Shown here: positions 35,831-64,000 of the stretch, piece after piece | How positions within the stretch are numbered: position 1 is the first letter of the stretch | How the letters are laid out: each line of letters starts with the position of its first letter | Origin: Asterias rubens | Lineage: Eukaryota | Direction of reading: 5' to 3' | Assembly: GCF_902459465.1 (NCBI RefSeq) | Contig: NC_047082.1 | Coordinates: forward strand, 2,542,001 to 2,606,000 | DNA: 64,000 bases | Made by a program: the position numbers and the translations under genes | The notes under the pieces: generated by a model | Database searches by the model: none | Told to the model about the DNA's origin: nothing | The model's input: only the letters and a program-made list of their open reading frames with translations

Positions 35831-36319
35831 GCCGGTGTCAGATGCAATTGTGTCCGCCATGCAATACTCTCCGCTCCGGACACTTTTGCATATGCAATCG
35901 TGTCCGGGGCTATGCAAAAACCGTCCGGTGGACCGTGTACATGACTAATCTGTACATGTGTGTGCGCGCGTAAGCGAGCGTGCATTACTGAACCTACGTA
36001 TCCCAACATGAATATTTTATGATTGCAGCGAATACCCAACGGCCAAACATTTCCCATGTCATTCATGACATGCACTTAGCTTGTAAAAAAATGGCGAACG
36101 TGTCCCGTCGGCAATGGGCGTTTAGTTTACTGCAAGGACGGTTTTGCACGGGGGCGGACACAACTGCATATGCAAATGTGTCCGGGCGGACACAATTGCA
36201 TTATGCAGCAGCGTCCGGGCGGAGACGAATGCATATGCAAAACCGTCCGGCGGACATTATTGCATATGCAGTCTTCCGGATAGTATTGCATAGAGGACAT
36301 AATTGCATGCGACACCGGC
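35831..36319. mobile_element. MITE family G (~490 bp, internal CGTCCGGGCGGACA..TGCA sub-repeats)
   Basis: TIR GCCGGTGTC(AG/GC)ATGCAATTRTGTCC at both ends; no clear target duplication. Second copy at 37811-38288; fragments at 52657-52791 and 62443-62491. Confidence 0.8.
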
Positions 36320-37267
36320 CCTAGATGAGCTAAATGACGAAGGTTGAACACAAGAGGGCGCTGTTTGTAGCGGCTATCAGGACGAAAGACTTGGAACCAA
36401 GTCTAGCTCTATGGTACCATTACCAACCTTGGAAGAGATACACTATTATCTTTGTTTTTCCAATCTTGTTGCTATATTCCTTCACCCACACACTTCATAA
36501 TATATCGCCCCAAACATGCCAAAGTTGAGCCAACTGTGGAGTTTGAATCACGTTATACAACGTAATCTTCGAGAAAGACTCTGTCGATCAGGGTCGAGAC
36601 GTCGGGCCATTAGCTATTTTTTGCATTGATATTACCGTATGTAATGTTGGTAAAAGCTAATTCTATTTTTCTCACCAAGTAACCTAAGTTCATGTTTAAA
36701 AAACATTACCTCAAGTCGTACAAATCGCGTTCATTCCACCTAAGTCTACTGCCGTTTTTGGCACCTTATGACCACAATATCACGTGTGGACGTTCCTTTC
36801 CTTGAGGAAAATCCTATTCCTCGACACTTTAAATAACACTGTGTGGACGTGTCTAAGTCTACACATAGTGATTCAAGTACATACACTATGTGGACCTCAT
36901 GTGGACCTCATCTGTCCACAGGTTCACTACAAGGCCCTAAATAGCGTTAAAACAGGAAATTTAGTAAAACAATCTTCCAACACCTCGCTTTACATCTTGA
37001 AAACAAGAGATAATCGAATGATTCAATCACCGTATCACTTAACATGAAGGTTTGTTTTGCTGGGGTTGTTGTACCGGTACCAAAAGGCGACCCTGGGCAA
37101 AATTTTATAAAGTAGCTCAACACAATTATGCTTACCAGAATACGTTTACCAGGCAAAATACCTGTGTCACATGTACTACTTGTGACTGGTATCCTGCTCA
37201 TTTTTGCTTAGCAGAAAATGTGTGAGCAATATTTCTTGTTTAAGAAGCTCTTTGACATTGGGTCCTG

Positions 37268-37426: not shown

Positions 37427-37810
37427 CTGGACATTGGGGGGGGGGTCGCTGCTGACAAATACAGGGTTTCAACTTCAAACACTAGAGTGATTCTAACAAC
37501 GGAATGTCAACACTCTCTTTATCGTTCGCCTTGATGTTTATTGTTGCAAAATGAAAAACACGCGTTTACGAACGTGACTATCGCCCCTAGGGTGAACATG
37601 TACATGTATAGCCAATGTAGTTATTAGTACTCGTAGAAGGGTTACATTTCTTAATGACACATTTCGAGTCCTAATCATTTTTATGAAGTGTTTATTTGAA
37701 ATGCATAAAGGATTATCTCCACCCCCGTTTACAAAATCTACAATCCCGGCCATATCTCGTTGGGCCCCCAGCCCCCCTTTCAATGTTAGTTCCCAATGTT
37801 GGTTCCGAAT

Positions 37811-38288
37811 GCCAGTGTCAGATGCAATTGTGTCCGCCATGCAATACTGTCCGCTCCGGACACTTTTGCATATGCAATCGTGTCCGGGGCTATGCAAAAA
37901 CCGTCCGGTGGACATGGATTGTGTATGACTGTACATGTATGTGCGAGCGTGCATGCACTGAACCTACGTATATGCAGCACGAATTATTCACGTATTATTT
38001 ATGATTTCCCATGTCATTCATGACATGCACTTAGCTTGTAAAAAATGGAGAACGTGTTCCGTCGACCAAGGGCGTTTAATTTACTGCAAGGGGGTTCTGC
38101 ACGGGGGCGGACCCAACTGCACAAGCAAATGTGTCCGTGCGGACACAATTGTGTTATGCAACAGCGTCCGGGCGGACACAATTACATTATGCAACAGCGT
38201 CCGGGCGGACATTATTGCATATGCAATAATGTCCTCCGGATAGTATTGCATAGAGTGCATAGAGGCCATAGTTGCATGCGACACCGGT
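37811..38288. mobile_element. MITE family G, second copy
   Basis: Direct near-duplicate of 35831-36319. Confidence 0.8.
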
Positions 38289-38759
38289 CTTTACAGTCAA
38301 CATTCAACATTGAGCGGGGGGACGGGGGGGCGGGGAGAAAATGTTTATTGTCAGTGGGAAGTGGATATGAAAGGTTTTATATAACGTTAGAAATGGGTGG
38401 CCCAAGCATTTTGGCCGGGATTGTAGATTCCAAAAAAAAAATTATTTGCGTTCGCCTAGCAACTATAGACCTACATATATTTTGAGGTATAAAGATTGAC
38501 AGCAAACACCATTACTTTAATCACAAGGTCATTGTTGACGACTCTATCGGCAAAAAGGCACTCAGTGTGTTTAACCTTTGAATTTAGAAAATAATTATGA
38601 GCTTTTTCCGCATAGTGTTTTTGTTCAAAACACTTAAGGATTAACCTAGAAAAGCTTGTTCCCACTTATTCTTATCATTGATACAAATAAATGTTCATAA
38701 ACATCAGATATTCTGGTTTGTGTTTCTTGTTTTCTTGATCGATATAACAAGGTCCTAAT

Positions 38760-50587: not shown

Positions 50588-51100
50588 TGGAATGGTGACA
50601 TGTATGTAGTGTTGAGTCTGCATGGTTTACTAAAATGAACACCTTGGACCAAGACTAAAGAGCAATCAGTTATTGATACTCAATGGAATGGAATGAGTTT
50701 CTTTGAAGGGTTTAGGTGTCATTCCTGCAACGAGATAATCCAACCGTTAGAGATTAAATCTTTATAATTTTTTATAATTTAAAATTTTGTTCCTTTCTTG
50801 GGTACGATATTTGGTGATTGATGATCGCCCTTCCAGCAGGAGATCTTCCAGTGATACTTATGTTGTCAAAATTCAGTGCTCATGGGTTTTCAGTTAGGAC
50901 TTTGTGTAAAATCGATTTAAAAAATGTATGCACAAGAAAAGGAGCAAACTGCCTTGTAACCGTATTACTCATTCACTTTCAACCTATCTTTATATATACA
51001 GACAATATAATGAAAATTTAATTTAATTTCATGGAACTTTCAGAATGTTTTTTTCAAAGTTGACTACGGTACTCAGTTAGTTTATTTATAGGCATGTTAA

Positions 51101-51445
51101 AGATACTATGTCAGATTTTTTGCAGATTTGACCCAAGGTATTTTGATGGGGGTCGAAAAAGTTACAAGCTTTCATTTGAGCCATCGCTCGAAAAAGTCTG
51201 CCAATTATTAGTAGCAGTGAAATAAAGTGCTCAAAATAAGTTTTTGTCGGGATCTCGACAATATATCACGTGACCAATTCTTATGTGTTTTATAAGAAAC
51301 GTTTTAAATTGTTCTCATGGTTCCTGACCATTAAAAGTAAAAGTTAAACTTGTTTTCGTTAGAGCGGGTGATACTCTTTAAAATACCATTCACTCAAAAA
51401 GAACTATTTATTAATGTTTCGGGCCAAAAATCTGACATAGCATCT
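51101..51445. mobile_element. Second Kolobok-like MITE family (345 bp)
   Basis: TTAA|AGATACTATGTCAGATTTTT ... AAAAATCTGACATAGCATCT|TTAA, TIR match 19/20. Confidence 0.85.
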
Positions 51446-53046
51446 TTAATAATGTATCAACCAAATTGCATTAAACGTAGGGTCAAACTTATATAACGCC
51501 CTCGACCAAGTTTGTGTACAATTTATCCAAAAGCTTACTTGTTCTAAAGATGGTAATAGTAGTAAGCATCCTGCGAAAATGTTTGTACAAAAGTGCTTAT
51601 GTTGATTTAAAAACCCATTCACAGAATGTCAACGGAGTTGAATCTCCAAACATTCCTAATAAGGGGACTCTGTGAGATTCACATTTCTGTGATGTCAGTT
51701 TGTGAACGCTGTGGCCGATATGTGATATGCACCTGCCGTCATCTCGCTAAATGTTGATGTATTGTTCAACGTTCTTGATGAAAGTACTGTAATTTTTTTC
51801 GCTGTTTTCTAAGCAAGTAGACACTTGGCTCAGCAAAAACTTTCAGAGGTGCCTTTTATTGTGTCTTTATTGATAATTTTGCCCATAAATCAACAATAAG
51901 ATGACAAAAGCATCCTATATAACGTTACCCTACTATAAGTTTATGATTTTTTTTTAATGAGTTTACCTAACTACTTTTGTAATAAATAATTTTGCAATGA
52001 ATTTTGAATGACTGAAAAATAAAGAATTAAAATCCTTTTAAATAAATATTTTTGTTTTCATCAGTAAAAGTGTTTTCTAACTTATGTTGGTTCAACCCAT
52101 AGAATAAATCAATTGTCTTTGGGGTCAAATACTATGTCTGAACAAAACTTTAGCTGTGACAGAAAGTGGTGCTACTAAAATCTGCCACTTAAGAAGAGTT
52201 CCCATTGGTGGAAAGTTAAGTCATTGGTCAATCTCTTGTTAAATTAACCAATCAAAGACAAACACTGAAGTAGGCCTAATCTTGATTGGCTGCCTTCTGC
52301 AGGTGGATTCCTAGGATGTTGGAAAACTTTCTTTGTTGAAGGGAGGGTAATGTACTTTAGGGAGTGGGCCAACCCTTTTCAAAGCCTGTGTGGCCAACTT
52401 CTGATTATTGAACTGTGAATAATCTTGCAGGTACAGCTATTTGGAAAATACCCTTTGAAATCTCACAAAAGAAATTTACACATGGTTGTACTGCAAGATT
52501 ACTATTTATCTACATTTTCCCTATTTATCCCCACCCCCATGCAAAGCTTTCAAATGCGACTAGAACAAACCAAAATCGGCATTCGGCCGAGAGATTGTTA
52601 AACTAGCTAACCAGTCCTTATAACAGTGTTAACCGCGGTGGTGCAAACCACCACACACAATGCAGCAGGGTCCGGGCGGACATGATTGCGTATGCAAAAC
52701 CGTCCGGCGGACATTATTGCATATGTAATAATGTCCTCCGGATAGTATTGCATAGAGGACATAATTGCATGCGACACCGGCAAGTCCTGAAAGTCGGCCA
52801 CCGACTTTGGCAAGTCGAGTAAAAATAGTCTTGTACCCAAACTCTGGATGTACTATATCTGCATTATAATAACGCATTCTAAGTAATTGGTTTGTGTGGG
52901 GCACTTGCTATGTCACCTAACAACAAATTGGACATCGATTCCCCTTGAATATTGAGGAAGAAAGTAAAGTTAGTGTCAATAAAAGTTGCATTTTGGGGGG
53001 TTCTGAGGTATTATTGTAGCCCAAATGCGATATTAGTTGTGCCTTC

Positions 53047-60387
<7,341 letters not shown>

Positions 60388-60409
60388 GGCAATTTGGTAT
60401 CTATATTTT

Positions 60410-60795
60410 GGGAGTGTCGTGGCCGAGCGGTTAAGAGCACCGAATTCAAACTCTGGTGTTTCTGATCAGCAGAGTGTGGGTTCGAATCCCCAGCCATGAC
60501 ACTTGTGTCCTTAAGTAAGACACACAACCATTGCTTCGTCCTTCGGATGGGACGTAAAGCCGTTGGTCCCATGTGTTGTGTAAATGCATGTAAAAGAACC
60601 CAGTGCACTTATCGAAAAGAGAAGGGGTCCGCCCCGGTGTTCCTGGCTGGATTGGCAGCATATTGCGCCACAGCACCTTGTAAACCATTACATGGTGCTT
60701 AAGGATTAGGTCTTATATCTCAAAATTTGCCCCACTCCTTGCAGTAATAATACCTGGCGCTTTGTATCCTTTGGCAAAAGGCGCGTTATAAATAC
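60410..60795 (+). mobile_element. tRNA-Leu-derived SINE (family D), full-length, 22 nt after the CYP stop codon
   Basis: Near-identical to 40120-40440. Confidence 0.88.
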
Positions 60796-60944
60796 GGTTA
60801 TTATCTTTGCTCAAATTCATAGAGCTACTTCTAAGATATGCTGAACAAGCTAATGAAGAAAACAAATTGTTAGAGGAACCTTGCATCAGTATGTTAAATC
60901 ATCTGAAACAACAGTATTGTAGCACACGTACTTAATACTAATAT

Positions 60945-61120
60945 TGGAGTACTGCTCTAGTACCATTTTGATCTTACATGTTCTCATACTTGTTACTCAT
61001 ACTGGAGCACTACTCTAGTACCATTTTGATGGTACTTGTAGTTATACTTGGAACTTGTACTCGAGAACTACTATAGTACCATTTTGATGGTACATGTACT
61101 CATACTTGGTACTCATATTT
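60945..61120. repeat. ~60-bp tandem repeat, 3 copies
   Basis: CTAGTACCATTTTGAT(C/G)..TAC.TG recurs three times. Confidence 0.75.
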
Positions 61121-62182
61121 ATACCCAGATTGCAAAATACTTCTATTAAAAGTCCATATTCCGATACTTGACCGAAAAAGAATCTACTTAAATTATGTAA
61201 ATCAATACTCAACTGAAAATGTACTTGGATTCTTATTTGAAGAAAAACAACAGCATTCCTTTTTGTTTTCTGACAATGCATCAATTCAAGTAATATAGGA
61301 ATATAGCTCTGGAATAGATTTTTCACAAAGTTTTTGAAAAAAATATTTCAAACCTCGAATTTTTAATTGTTAAAGTGTCTATAATTGTATTATTTAACAT
61401 TTTTTAACAAAAGGGCATTTATGAATGGGAATAAAACAGCAGTGACTGGTTCTTAAACGTCCGTTTAAAACCTTGCAGGGTCGTTGCCGTGCGATCTTTA
61501 TCACACGGCCGCCGACCCTGAAAAGGTAACATTGTCGGACCTATTTATAGGTGTGATGCAAATTGTCATTTTTTAATTGAAGTAAGATGACAATTTTATG
61601 TACTTAAAATTTATTTTTTCAAGCTTTTTGGTGAATTTTCATAGTAAAGAAATGTGGGAAATTTTTATTAACTATATTTAATTTGAAAGCTTACTATTAG
61701 TCTTCTTATCTTATCTGTTTATCGACTGACTGAAATTTTATCTTTTGTCATTCCCTTCTTGTTTTATTTTAATGTTTTCAGTATTTTTCAAAATAATGAC
61801 CTCGGATAGAAGGAATTATGAGTTTATTAATAATAATGTGTGTTAGGAGTTTGAACAAATAGAACAGAATGAAGTGTTTTTTAATTAATTGTGCACCATA
61901 CTTTAGGTTTATTTTTATTATGTATGAATTTATTTGGCAACTTTATGAAAAAGGCATTCAAACTAACATCATTCGGGTATCAGTAATTGGTTTTCAATTG
62001 ATGGGACCAACAGGAAACATTTATATATTTATTATATTTTTAATCTTATTTAATCACATCTTTTTAATTATAAATAAACAAATTAATCTTTCGCTTATTG
62101 GATGTATATTAGTTTTCACTGCATACTGCGATTCGATATTGTTGCACACTTACTGCAGTTTTTGACAACTTATTGTCGGGAT

Positions 62183-62396
62183 CTCGACAATATATCACGT
62201 GACCAATTCCAAAATCGGCATTCGGCCAAGAGATTGTTAAACTAGCTAACCAGTCCTTATAACAGTGTTAACCGCGGTGGTGCAAACCACCACCGCGGTT
62301 AACACTGTTAACACTGTTATAAGGACTGGTTAGCTAGTTTAACAATCTCTTGGCCGAATGCCGATTTTGGAATTGGTCACGTGATATATTGTCGAG
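62183..62396. repeat. Long fold-back palindrome
   Basis: Arms 62183-62282 and 62288-62396 are exact reverse complements apart from a 9-bp duplication (AACACTGTT) in the right arm; loop is CAAAC. Confidence 0.95.
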
Positions 62397-62546
62397 CTCC
62401 GGATATCCACCATCCAGGGGCCGGGTGGTGCAAACCACCACACACAATGCAGCAGGGTCCGGGCGGACATGATTGCGTATGCAAAACCGTCTGAGATATT
62501 ATTTTAGCCCAAATGCGATATTAGTTGTGCCTTCTTGGAGTCAAAG

Positions 62547-62716
62547 ATGGAGAATGCAGAGTTAATGCCCACGTACGGCGTGTACATGGTGTATGTTTTA
62601 GGTGGTTTTCTGGCCAGTGTTGTTGGAGTAGTTCTGCTATTGATTACGTTTTGGACTCTGTACACACACAGAGTACACCAGAAATATCGGCACATACCTG
62701 GACCGAAGTTAGGACA
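62547..62716 (+). CDS. Exon 1 of a second CYP46A1-like copy (rest of gene outside the window or absent)
   Basis: 170 nt from ATG 62547 to donor CA|GTAAGT, with 3 differences from 53059-53228. Homology continues about 100 nt into intron 1 (to ~62815) and then stops. No exon 2 is seen before base 64000. Confidence 0.8.
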
Positions 62717-63559
62717 GTAAGTATAAATTATGATTTAATTCAGGTTTTCTTATGTAGTGGATTTGCCGGTACTATGAAGGCCTTTGTTGGCGTTTCTCGG
62801 TTTGTGTGTGGTCCTAAAAATAGTCTAGGTTCCTAGACCATTGGTGTTGCGTGGTCACACAAAACCAACGTTCCGATTATGCACGGCAAAAACTGTACAC
62901 AGGACATTTGCAACGACGGGTCATAACTTTTTTATTGTTTTTCGGCAAATCTCCCCCGACTTTCCGGTGGAGCCAATCAGAGGCTGCGTTGCGGTTGGCT
63001 CATGAATAATTCATCAGTGTTGTGCATGCAGTGTGTACAATGCATGCAGTAATTGCGTTGCATGGCTTTTGCTATACTCTGCATGTGTGTGTGTGGGTAT
63101 AATTATGTTTTTATCGGAGTATAATAATGTCCAGATCAGTACGATTTGAAACTTTGCCACATGGTGGAAATACGATAAAGGAAGGTTTGCGGTACCACCA
63201 CAAACCTTTCTATGTATAATATCCAGATCCAGACTACTGCATTGCCATGATGCAGCTTGAAATGCGATCGTGGCGTTATGCTCCCGACGTGCCAGGGCCC
63301 ACACTGATGAAGCCTGTATTGGCTAAACAATTTGCTTATAGTTAAATAGTATTGCTTAGCAGAAACTGGTTACCAGCCAATTTTTAATTAAATTTGAAAT
63401 GTTGTAGACTTATGCCTAGTGCCCACCTAAATTTTTGGATAGTAAAGCAATTTTGTACAGTATTTTCTGCTTTAATAACAGATATTAACTGGTGGGCCCT
63501 GTAGTGTTATTCACAGTGAAAGTTTTTTAATCTTGGGGGAAGGAAATCTTGAGGGATTC

Positions 63560-64000
63560 AAAAGCGTCTTTGTGAGAATGTATTTTGAAACGTAACCGTA
63601 GCTGCAGATCTTGGAACGTAAGCGTAGCTTGACTCGGGATTGAAAGCGTACTTTTTGATATTGTAGCGTAACCTAAACGTATCTTGGAGTGTATAAGCGT
63701 AGCTGAGTAGCTGCGTAGCTTGGAACGTAACAGTATCTTTTGGAGCGTAAGCATATCTTGGAACGTAATTCGTAGCTGCGTATCTTGGAACGTAAGCATA
63801 ACTTGACATGGGATTGAAAGCGTACCTTTTGATATTATAGCGTAACTTGAAGGAACATAAGCAGATCTGTAAGAGTAGCTGTGTAGCTTGGAACGTTGAC
63901 ATCTTTTGGAACGTAAGCATATCTTGGACTGAAGCGTAGCATCTTGGAACATAGAGCTGCGAACACGTAGCTGCGTATCTTTGAACGTAAGCATAGCTTG
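63560..64000. repeat. Satellite with a ~16-bp basic unit and a ~174-bp higher-order period
   Basis: TCTTGGAACGTAAGC(G/A)TA units; GGGATTGAAAGCGTAC recurs at 63636 and 63810. Confidence 0.85.

What the first reader, a model, noticed from the sequence alone, without database searches (positions are those of the whole stretch)
62173..62815. Second P450 copy is preceded by a stitched patchwork of the first copy's upstream DNA
62173-62209 equals 51244-51280, an internal piece of the Kolobok-like MITE. It joins through 1 nt of microhomology to a copy of 52570-52704, skipping about 1.29 kb. That joins through TC microhomology to a copy of 53002-53327, skipping about 300 bp of proximal promoter and the family G right TIR. 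Broken TE ends show that copy 2 is the derived one. Serial microhomology jumps plus a fold-back are the signature of replication template switching (FoSTeS/MMBIR) or polymerase-theta templated insertion. This looks like a gene duplication caught with its mechanism and promoter rewiring still legible.
Basis: partly seen in the sequence, partly recalled or inferred. Interest (0 to 1): 0.75.

Follow-up and report, generated by a model that had tools for sequence, protein, structure and literature searches.

The report
Layered promoter scars in starfish P450 array
The patchwork upstream of the second copy of a starfish (Asterias rubens) P450 gene is real, but it records at least two separate rearrangements in a three-copy gene array, not the original duplication caught in the act.

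Summary
62173-62209 matches 51244-51280 (37/37), 62209-62293 matches 52570-52654 (84/85), 62421-62491 matches 52633-52704, and 62490-62824 matches 53002-53336 (321/335). The copy of 52570-52704 is split by a fold-back that forms a 228-bp palindrome.

The window is A. rubens LR699112.1:2542001-2606000. The locus holds three complete tandem CYP46-like P450 genes, not two.

The flank|MITE-piece join and the TC join that removes 297 bp also sit upstream of copy 3. The 51280|52570 join, the fold-back and the 17-nt filler occur only at copy 2. The mosaic was therefore built in at least two steps.

A. amurensis has a tandem pair with a simpler junction at nearly the same point and keeps the 297 bp. 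The duplication is therefore probably older than the patchwork.

The 37-nt piece belongs to a very high-copy MITE family, so its source cannot be pinned to copy 1's upstream DNA. Homology ends at 62824 because a 2.5-kb repeat insertion sits in intron 1.

Independent runs carry the right arm, filler and TC join. Copy 2 is transcribed and spliced.

The fold-back fits a known mechanism: a hairpin-primed template switch. Another reader of this scan had already noted the palindrome on this same stretch (s1-178723).

The parts
51097..51449 (.). TTAA-flanked MITE upstream of copy 1. It is absent from the A. amurensis ortholog.
   Evidence: 27-nt inverted ends, 93% complementary. Empty site in A. amurensis. 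The family is very high-copy in reads.
51244..51280 (+). Interior of the MITE that matches piece A.
   Evidence: 37/37 identity to 62173-62209.
52570..52704 (+). Upstream DNA of copy 1 that matches pieces B and C. It holds the native hairpin GTGGTG-CAAAC-CACCAC at 52638-52654 and the start of repeat G at about 52655.
52705..53001 (+). 297 bp of proximal promoter plus the rest of repeat G. Present in copy 1 and both A. amurensis copies, missing from copies 2 and 3.
53002..53336 (+). 5' leader, exon 1 and start of intron 1 of copy 1 (source-like of D).
   Evidence: 95.8% identity to 62490-62824. Six of the first eight differences are changes unique to copy 1.
53059..60387 (+). P450 copy 1 (Ar1, XP_033645005.1, cholesterol 24-hydroxylase-like), 13 exons.
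   Evidence: tblastn of P0071. Locus L005.
60385..62172 (+). 3' flank of copy 1, the end of the repeat unit. The array junction J1 is at 62172|62173.
   Evidence: The same flank ends in the same join upstream of copy 3, and runs on into unique DNA after copy 3.
62173..62209 (+). Piece A, a MITE fragment. It begins with a second small hairpin, TTGTCG-GGATCT-CGACAA.
   Evidence: Word depth 3,600-30,500 in three runs, with loose ends that continue as the MITE family on both sides.
62209..62293 (+). Piece B. Together with A it forms the left arm of the palindrome. The pivot hairpin is at 62277-62293.
   Evidence: 84/85 identity to 52570-52654. Copy 3 shares the variant at 62228.
62288..62403 (-). 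Right arm: reverse-complement copy of B and A, including the A/B join. It carries a 9-nt tandem repeat at 62301-62318.
   Evidence: Fold energy -137 kcal/mol, z = -28. An independent contig covers 62307-62453 with no difference.
62404..62420 (+). Filler with no template found. The end of the right arm and the filler hold three overlapping self-complementary words.
62421..62491 (+). Piece C: a second copy of the hairpin plus the left part of repeat G, ending at the TC join.
62490..62824 (+). Piece D: 5' leader, exon 1 (62547-62716) and first 108 nt of intron 1 of copy 2 (Ar2, XP_033644712.1).
   Evidence: A contig joins exon 1 to copy 2's own exon 2.
62825..64000 (.). Start of a ~2.5-kb insertion in intron 1 of copy 2: a very high-copy repeat followed by a tandem repeat at 63540-64000.
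   Evidence: Word depth up to 170,000. Homology to copy 1's intron resumes at about 65310.

Best explanation
The stretch is the spacer and promoter between copies 1 and 2 of a three-copy tandem array of CYP46A1-like P450 genes in Asterias rubens. Its mosaic was built in layers.

Layer 1 (shared with copy 3): the 3' flank of the repeat unit is joined at 62172|62173 to a fragment of a high-copy MITE.

Layer 2 (shared with copy 3, absent from copy 1 and from A. amurensis): a 297-bp deletion directly upstream of the 5' leader, joined at a TC overlap.

Layer 3 (copy 2 only): starting from a copy-3-like spacer, about 627 bp were lost, which joined the MITE piece to the equivalent of 52570 at a 1-nt overlap. 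A 3' end that had just copied the native 6-bp hairpin then folded back and copied its own strand for about 115 nt. It added 17 untemplated nt and resumed on the original template 18-22 nt upstream of where it had left. This made a 228-bp palindrome 144 bp upstream of the start codon.

Shown: the pieces, the joins, which copies and which species have them, and that copy 2 is a whole, spliced gene. Inferred: the polymerase events (an intrastrand template switch or snap-back during replication or break repair), the order within layer 3, and any effect on expression.
For: Identity of the locus: the window is identical to LR699112.1, and there are three complete 13-exon copies at 53059-60384, 62547-73364 and 77827-86589 in window coordinates.

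Shared versus private joins:
- Copy 3's upstream is flank | MITE piece 51238-51305 | about 4 nt | 51972-52704 | 53002 onward.
- The flank|A join and the TC join read letter for letter the same at copies 2 and 3.
- The motif across the TC join occurs only at 62487 and 77767, and nowhere in 46 kb of A. amurensis.
- Copy 2's A is a subset of copy 3's longer piece.
- Copy 2 shares the B variant at 62228 with copy 3.
- In gene bodies, copies 2 and 3 are sisters: 18 sites against 5 and 4.

Fold-back:
- The pivot hairpin is native in copy 1, copy 3 and A. amurensis.
- The arms are perfect for 100 nt.
- The right arm contains the A/B join, so that join is not younger than the fold-back.

Reality of the structure: independent contigs cover 62307-62453 and 62424-800 without a difference (X2). 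A differently labelled organism (X5) covers 62323-62453 with a 3-nt indel.

Expression: a contig runs from exon 1 into an exon 2 that matches only copy 2.
Against: No single contig or read was seen to cross the left arm, the centre and the right arm. The centre rests on the assembly alone.

The fold-back stops within 0-6 nt of the older junction at 62172|62173. The layered model does not predict this. I can only attribute it to the small hairpin at the start of A, or to chance.

Layer 3 could be one event or two.

Gene conversion is active in this array, because gene bodies group by species. A spacer could in principle be a conversion mosaic, which weakens arguments from shared joins.
Confidence: 0.75

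Rival explanations
1. One reading: one replication-based event (FoSTeS/MMBIR or polymerase-theta templated insertion) created copy 2 and stitched all the joins together at the moment of duplication.
For: All pieces are collinear with copy 1's upstream DNA and have 0-2 nt overlaps. One piece is inverted. The filler and the clustered short palindromes look like error-prone synthesis.
Against: Copy 3 carries two of the joins without the other two. A. amurensis has a tandem pair with a simpler junction and keeps the 297 bp. Copy 3 holds 51281-51305 and 51972-52569, which copy 2 lacks, so copy 2's form cannot be the founder.
Confidence: 0.06
2. Independent duplications. A. rubens had one copy at the split from A. 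amurensis and then amplified the unit 51244-62172 three times. On this view 62172|51244 is the true founding junction, piece A really comes from copy 1's own MITE, and later deletions trimmed copies 2 and 3.
For: The array is an exact threefold repeat of a unit that starts at A and ends at 62172. In the first unit, A sits in its native MITE. Gene bodies group by species. Copy 3's upstream is 97% identical to copy 1's but only 81% to the second A. amurensis copy. The MITE is absent from A. amurensis.
Against: Copy 3's homology to copy 1's upstream resumes within 0-8 nt of the A. amurensis junction, about a 1% coincidence. The letters TTATTAC are shared there. About five intron-1 sites group copy 1 with the second A. 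amurensis copy, and copy 2 with the first. The second A. amurensis copy's upstream is 19-20% diverged from the others, more than the 6% between the species.
Confidence: 0.3
3. The palindrome is a foldback transposon or MITE that inserted upstream of copy 2.
For: Long, near-perfect inverted arms. One end is MITE-derived.
Against: Most of each arm (B) is local low-copy promoter DNA, with word depth about 50 against 30,000 for A in the same run. There is no target-site duplication. The left arm is collinear with copy 3's spacer, and the pivot is a hairpin native to all copies.
Confidence: 0.02
4. The structure is an assembly or polishing artefact.
For: Palindromes can arise from chimeric long reads. 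No contig was seen to cross the centre.
Against: The right arm, filler and C are carried without a difference by contigs of marine metagenome runs from other samples. A differently labelled organism carries them with a 3-nt indel. Words of 62160-62450 are held by at least ten runs.
Confidence: 0.03

Closest known systems
Template-switch mutations at short inverted repeats (quasi-palindrome mutagenesis; inverted-repeat expansion). PMC8794818, PMC7954356, PMC8604942; PMC13100816 for promoters.
   Same: A pre-existing short hairpin is the pivot. The new DNA is the exact reverse complement of the adjacent strand. Synthesis returns to the original template close to the exit point. The result is a longer, perfect inverted repeat in a promoter.
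   Different: The copied tract is about 115 nt. This is long compared with the short-range events those papers treat, as far as I recall; I read only their abstracts. The return is not clean: there are 17 untemplated nt and an 18-22-nt re-copy.
Synthesis-dependent MMEJ and polymerase-theta snap-back templated insertions (PMC2943611, PMC5728401, PMC4912351, PMC5068794).
   Same: Secondary-structure-primed synthesis in cis, filler nucleotides, minimal overlaps at the joins, and stuttering short self-complementary words at the end of the tract.
   Different: No break or enzyme can be shown from sequence. The snap-back tract is much longer than the insertions usually reported (my own recollection, not checked).
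FoSTeS/MMBIR complex rearrangements (Lee 2007; Hastings 2009; cited from memory).
   Same: Several joins with microhomology, one inverted templated segment, and an association with copy-number gain.
   Different: Here the joins are of different ages, and the gain in copy number is older than the copy-2-specific joins.
Tandem P450 arrays that evolve by unequal crossing-over and gene conversion (general knowledge).
   Same: Three head-to-tail copies share the same unit junction. Gene bodies are homogenised within each species, while spacers keep older differences.
   Different: Nothing fundamental. The spacer scars are unusually legible.

Membership tests
FoSTeS/MMBIR single-event complex rearrangement | All breakpoint joins arise in one event. 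| tested here: not met
   The flank|A and TC joins are shared with copy 3. The 51280|52570 join and the fold-back are private to copy 2.
FoSTeS/MMBIR single-event complex rearrangement | Microhomology at the joins, and templated segments from nearby DNA in either orientation. | tested here: met
   Overlaps of 0 nt (62172|62173), 1 nt (A/B) and 2 nt (C/D). There is an inverted 115-nt copy of the adjacent strand.
Inverted-repeat template switch (quasi-palindrome type) | A short inverted repeat pre-exists at the pivot in the unrearranged state. | tested here: met
   GTGGTG-CAAAC-CACCAC is present in copy 1, in copy 3 and in the first A. amurensis copy.
Inverted-repeat template switch (quasi-palindrome type) | The new tract is the reverse complement of the flanking strand, and relatives lack it. 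| tested here: met
   100/100 perfect arms. The tract is absent from copies 1 and 3 and from both A. amurensis copies. Organism D's contig reads straight from B into C.
Polymerase-theta end joining / SD-MMEJ | Origin at a double-strand break and dependence on the enzyme. | not testable with these tools
   Sequence alone cannot show a break or name the polymerase.
Polymerase-theta end joining / SD-MMEJ | Snap-back templated insertion with filler and short self-complementary stutter. | tested here: inconclusive
   The form fits: 17-nt filler and three overlapping mini-palindromes, which occur in 0.2-0.3% of 21-nt windows by a post hoc count. The 115-nt tract is longer than usual.
Foldback transposon / MITE | Many genomic copies of the arms and a target-site duplication. 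| tested here: not met
   B is low-copy in reads, and no duplication flanks the palindrome.
Tandem array made or maintained by unequal crossing-over | The same unit junction occurs between successive copies. | tested here: met
   An identical flank|A join lies upstream of copies 2 and 3. The flank runs on into unique DNA after copy 3.
Cytochrome P450, CYP46A1-like | P450 domain over the full length, with nearest named relatives being cholesterol 24-hydroxylases. | tested here: met
   Precomputed PF00067. RefSeq names the proteins cholesterol 24-hydroxylase-like. There are 13 exons in each copy.

The most novel reading that the evidence does not exclude
The copy-2-only part (a forward jump of about 627 bp, a 115-nt hairpin-primed snap-back that runs to the start of the MITE piece, a stuttering filler, and a return 18-22 nt upstream) is one germline repair or replication event. 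It appears widespread in the species, sits 144 bp upstream of an expressed gene, and has switch points set by two small hairpins. That would make it an unusually long and legible natural scar of snap-back synthesis in an animal germ line. It would also make such young tandem arrays a place to read germline repair mechanisms.
Probability: 0.3. Interest if true: 0.5.

Novelty: new member of a known kind. Interest (0 to 1): 0.33.

Why it matters
This is a clean, dated example of how the promoters of young tandem paralogs drift apart by structural mutation rather than point mutation. It includes a shared 297-bp promoter-proximal deletion and then a private 228-bp palindrome, each placed on a copy-and-species tree.

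It also shows that a mosaic which looks like a single event in one copy can be split into layers once the other copies and a sister species are read.

Nothing here changes what is known about the mechanisms. The value lies in a well-resolved natural case and in three paralogs with different promoters that can be compared for expression.

Tried and rejected
1. I first thought the upstream pieces A-C were younger than D: 1 mismatch in about 192 nt against 11 in 172 non-coding nt. My first count gave Fisher p = 0.03, using a mis-registered C. I rejected this. Most D differences are changes unique to copy 1, because copies 2 and 3 and both A. amurensis copies agree. Copy 3 shares the B variant.

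2. I took P0071 for copy 2 because its exon 1 is identical. Its locus did not match the window. It is copy 3.

3. I looked for a template for the 17-nt filler. There was no match with up to 3 mismatches in the window. No 11-mer matched in 96.6 kb of A. rubens or 46.4 kb of A. amurensis.

4. Joins made by splicing of an RNA copy: the skipped pieces do not begin with GT or end with AG.

5. Foldback transposon and assembly artefact: see the rival explanations.

6. The MITE has no second copy in the window. Its family status came only from read depth and loose ends. I did not test the 'Kolobok-like' label.

7. No laid contig crosses the centre of the palindrome. This is expected of word-graph contigs at an inverted repeat, so it says nothing either way.

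8. A five-way gene-body alignment gave no orthology signal between the species, only grouping by species. Two misaligned repeat blocks inflate the count of 417 species-split sites.

Full report
**Observation**

Printing each piece in register with copy 1 fixes the joins to the base.

- Piece A (62173-62209) is 37/37 identical to 51244-51280.
- A shares one C with piece B (62209-62293 = 52570-52654, one mismatch).
- Piece C (62421-62491 = 52633-52704) has no mismatch and one 1-nt gap.
- C shares TC with piece D (62490-62824 = 53002-53336, 14 mismatches).

A lies inside a TTAA-flanked element with 27-nt inverted ends at 51097-51123 and 51423-51449. In copy 1 it runs on to about 52781.

Between B and C the sequence folds back.

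- 62288-62403 is the reverse complement of the left arm. It is perfect for 100 nt (62183-62282) and has a 9-nt tandem repeat at 62301-62318.
- The pivot is GTGGTG-CAAAC-CACCAC, a hairpin native to copy 1.
- A 17-nt filler follows, and then 18-22 nt of the hairpin region are copied again.
- As single-stranded DNA the stretch folds at -137 kcal/mol, z = -28.

**What the locus is**

One exon of copy 1 led to a Patiria P450. That hit led to a 90% cluster with three A. rubens and two A. amurensis proteins, all named cholesterol 24-hydroxylase-like.

Their loci overlap the window exactly. This places the window at LR699112.1:2542001-2606000.

In window coordinates A. rubens has three complete 13-exon copies, lying between a BRCT gene and a FERM gene:
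- Ar1 at 53059-60384
- Ar2 at 62547-73364
- Ar3 at 77827-86589

A. amurensis has two copies, Aa1 and Aa2, between the same neighbours.

A contig of run X27 joins its exon 1 at the donor 62716|GT to an exon 2 that matches only Ar2. Ar2 is thus transcribed and spliced.

Homology to copy 1 stops at 62824 because about 2.5 kb of repeat was inserted into intron 1. Word depth there reaches 170,000, and homology resumes at about 65310.

**The joins have different ages**

Ar3's upstream region reads as follows: the same 3' flank, the same join to the MITE piece, a longer MITE piece (51238-51305), about 4 nt, then 51972-52704 without interruption, then 53002 onward.

- The flank|A join and the TC join are letter-identical in Ar2 and Ar3.
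- The motif across the TC join occurs only at those two places. It is absent from 46 kb of A. amurensis.
- Ar3 has no 51280|52570 join and no fold-back.
- Ar2's pieces are subsets of Ar3's, whereas Ar3 holds 51281-51305 and 51972-52569, which Ar2 lacks. Ar2's form therefore derives from an Ar3-like form and not the reverse.
- Ar2 and Ar3 share the B variant at 62228.
- Ar2 and Ar3 are sisters in the gene body: 18 informative sites against 5 and 4.
- The right arm of the palindrome contains the A/B join, so that join is as old as the fold-back or older.

At least two, and probably three, separate events are therefore recorded.

**Sister species**

- Both A. amurensis copies keep the 297 bp in front of D.
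- Aa1 lacks the MITE.
- The A. amurensis array junction joins the flank 73 nt earlier (equivalent to 62099) to the equivalent of about 51964.
- Ar3's homology to copy 1's upstream resumes at 51966-51972, and both species read TTATTAC there.
- I estimate a coincidence of position within 8 nt at about 1%, that is 17 of about 1,750 possible positions.
- In the first 60 nt of intron 1 beyond the donor region, about five sites group Ar1 with Aa2 and Ar2 with Aa1.
- Aa2's upstream is only 80-81% identical to Aa1, Ar1 or Ar3. Ar1 and Aa1 are 94% identical.

Together these points favour a duplication older than the species split, with later homogenisation of gene bodies within each species.

I give this about 0.6. 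The alternative is independent duplications, in which A. rubens amplified the unit 51244-62172. It explains the exact threefold periodicity and the grouping by species, and it remains open. Under either history the patchwork at Ar2 is layered.

**Source of piece A**

When contigs of four runs were laid on 61950-62950, A had word depths of 3,600 to 30,500, against 8-25 for the flank. Loose ends on both sides continue as the MITE sequence.

A is therefore an internal piece of a very abundant family. The copy upstream of Ar1 is one plausible source, but it cannot be shown to be the source.

**Reality of the structure**

Words of 62160-62450 are held by at least ten runs, including marine metagenomes from several samples.

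- X2 has contigs over 62307-62453 (right arm, filler, C) and over 62424-62800 (across the TC join), with no difference.
- X5, a differently labelled organism, covers 62323-62453 with CGC put in behind 62420.
- Organism D reads straight from B into C. It also carries the 11-nt flank deletion seen in the A. amurensis assembly, so it behaves as that species.
- No contig crosses the centre of the palindrome.

**Mechanism (inferred)**

The fold-back has the form of an intrastrand template switch. A 3' end that has just copied the native hairpin pairs with itself and copies its own strand backwards. It then returns near its exit point.

This is the known route by which short inverted repeats are made perfect and longer (PMC8794818, PMC7954356, PMC13100816). 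It is also the snap-back mode described for synthesis-dependent MMEJ and polymerase theta (PMC2943611, PMC5728401, PMC4912351).

Several features suggest low-fidelity synthesis:
- the filler
- the 9-nt repeat
- the errors at the outer end of the arm
- three overlapping self-complementary words at 62394-62408, found in 0.2-0.3% of 21-nt windows by a post hoc count

Which polymerase acted, and whether the trigger was a break or a stalled fork, cannot be read from sequence.

One feature stays unexplained. The copy ends within 0-6 nt of the older junction at 62172|62173, where A begins with a second 6-bp hairpin.

**Verdict**

The idea of a duplication caught in the act is not supported. What remains is a well-dated, natural example of known mutational processes reshaping the promoter of one paralog. 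Another first-stage note (s1-178723) had already described the palindrome on this same stretch.

Noticed in passing
window 53002-53229 (copy 1 leader and exon 1): Six of the first eight differences between copies 1 and 2 are changes unique to copy 1; copies 2 and 3 and both A. amurensis copies agree. They include two amino-acid changes (T34A, L38Q). One further leader change creates an in-frame ATG 12 nt upstream, which gives the 520-aa annotation.
   Followed up: partly
window 53265-53345 and 62753-62833; A. amurensis L003 10205-10287 and 29480-29561: At the start of intron 1, about five sites group copy 1 with the second A. amurensis copy and copy 2 with the first. The rest of the gene groups by species. 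This looks like a relic of old paralog types that escaped gene conversion.
   Followed up: partly
window 62821-62935: Extremely abundant repeat, with word depth up to about 170,000 in one run. It lies at the left edge of a 2.5-kb insertion in intron 1 of copy 2.
   Followed up: no
window 63540-64000: Tandem repeat with a period of about 175-190 nt, built from GGAACGTAAGCGTAGCT-like words, inside the same intron insertion.
   Followed up: no
L001 7167-8501 (window coordinates 74993-76327, beyond the window): The spacer between copies 2 and 3 holds about 2 kb that the spacer between copies 1 and 2 lacks. It includes four tandem units of about 330 nt that are 88-90% alike.
   Followed up: no
L003 10801-18667 (A. 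amurensis first copy): The intron after exon 2 is 7.9 kb long, against 0.1-1.3 kb in the other four copies.
   Followed up: no
window 36040-36320, 37800-37920, 37985-38290: Repeat G is a longer element with about 33-nt subterminal repeats of the GGACA..ATTGCAT type. It is present twice in direct orientation and once inverted within 2.3 kb. The second A. amurensis copy carries a fuller version of it upstream than any A. rubens copy.
   Followed up: partly
run X27: A run guessed to be DNA holds a contig that is spliced from exon 1 to exon 2 of copy 2. It therefore contains cDNA or RNA-derived sequence.
   Followed up: partly
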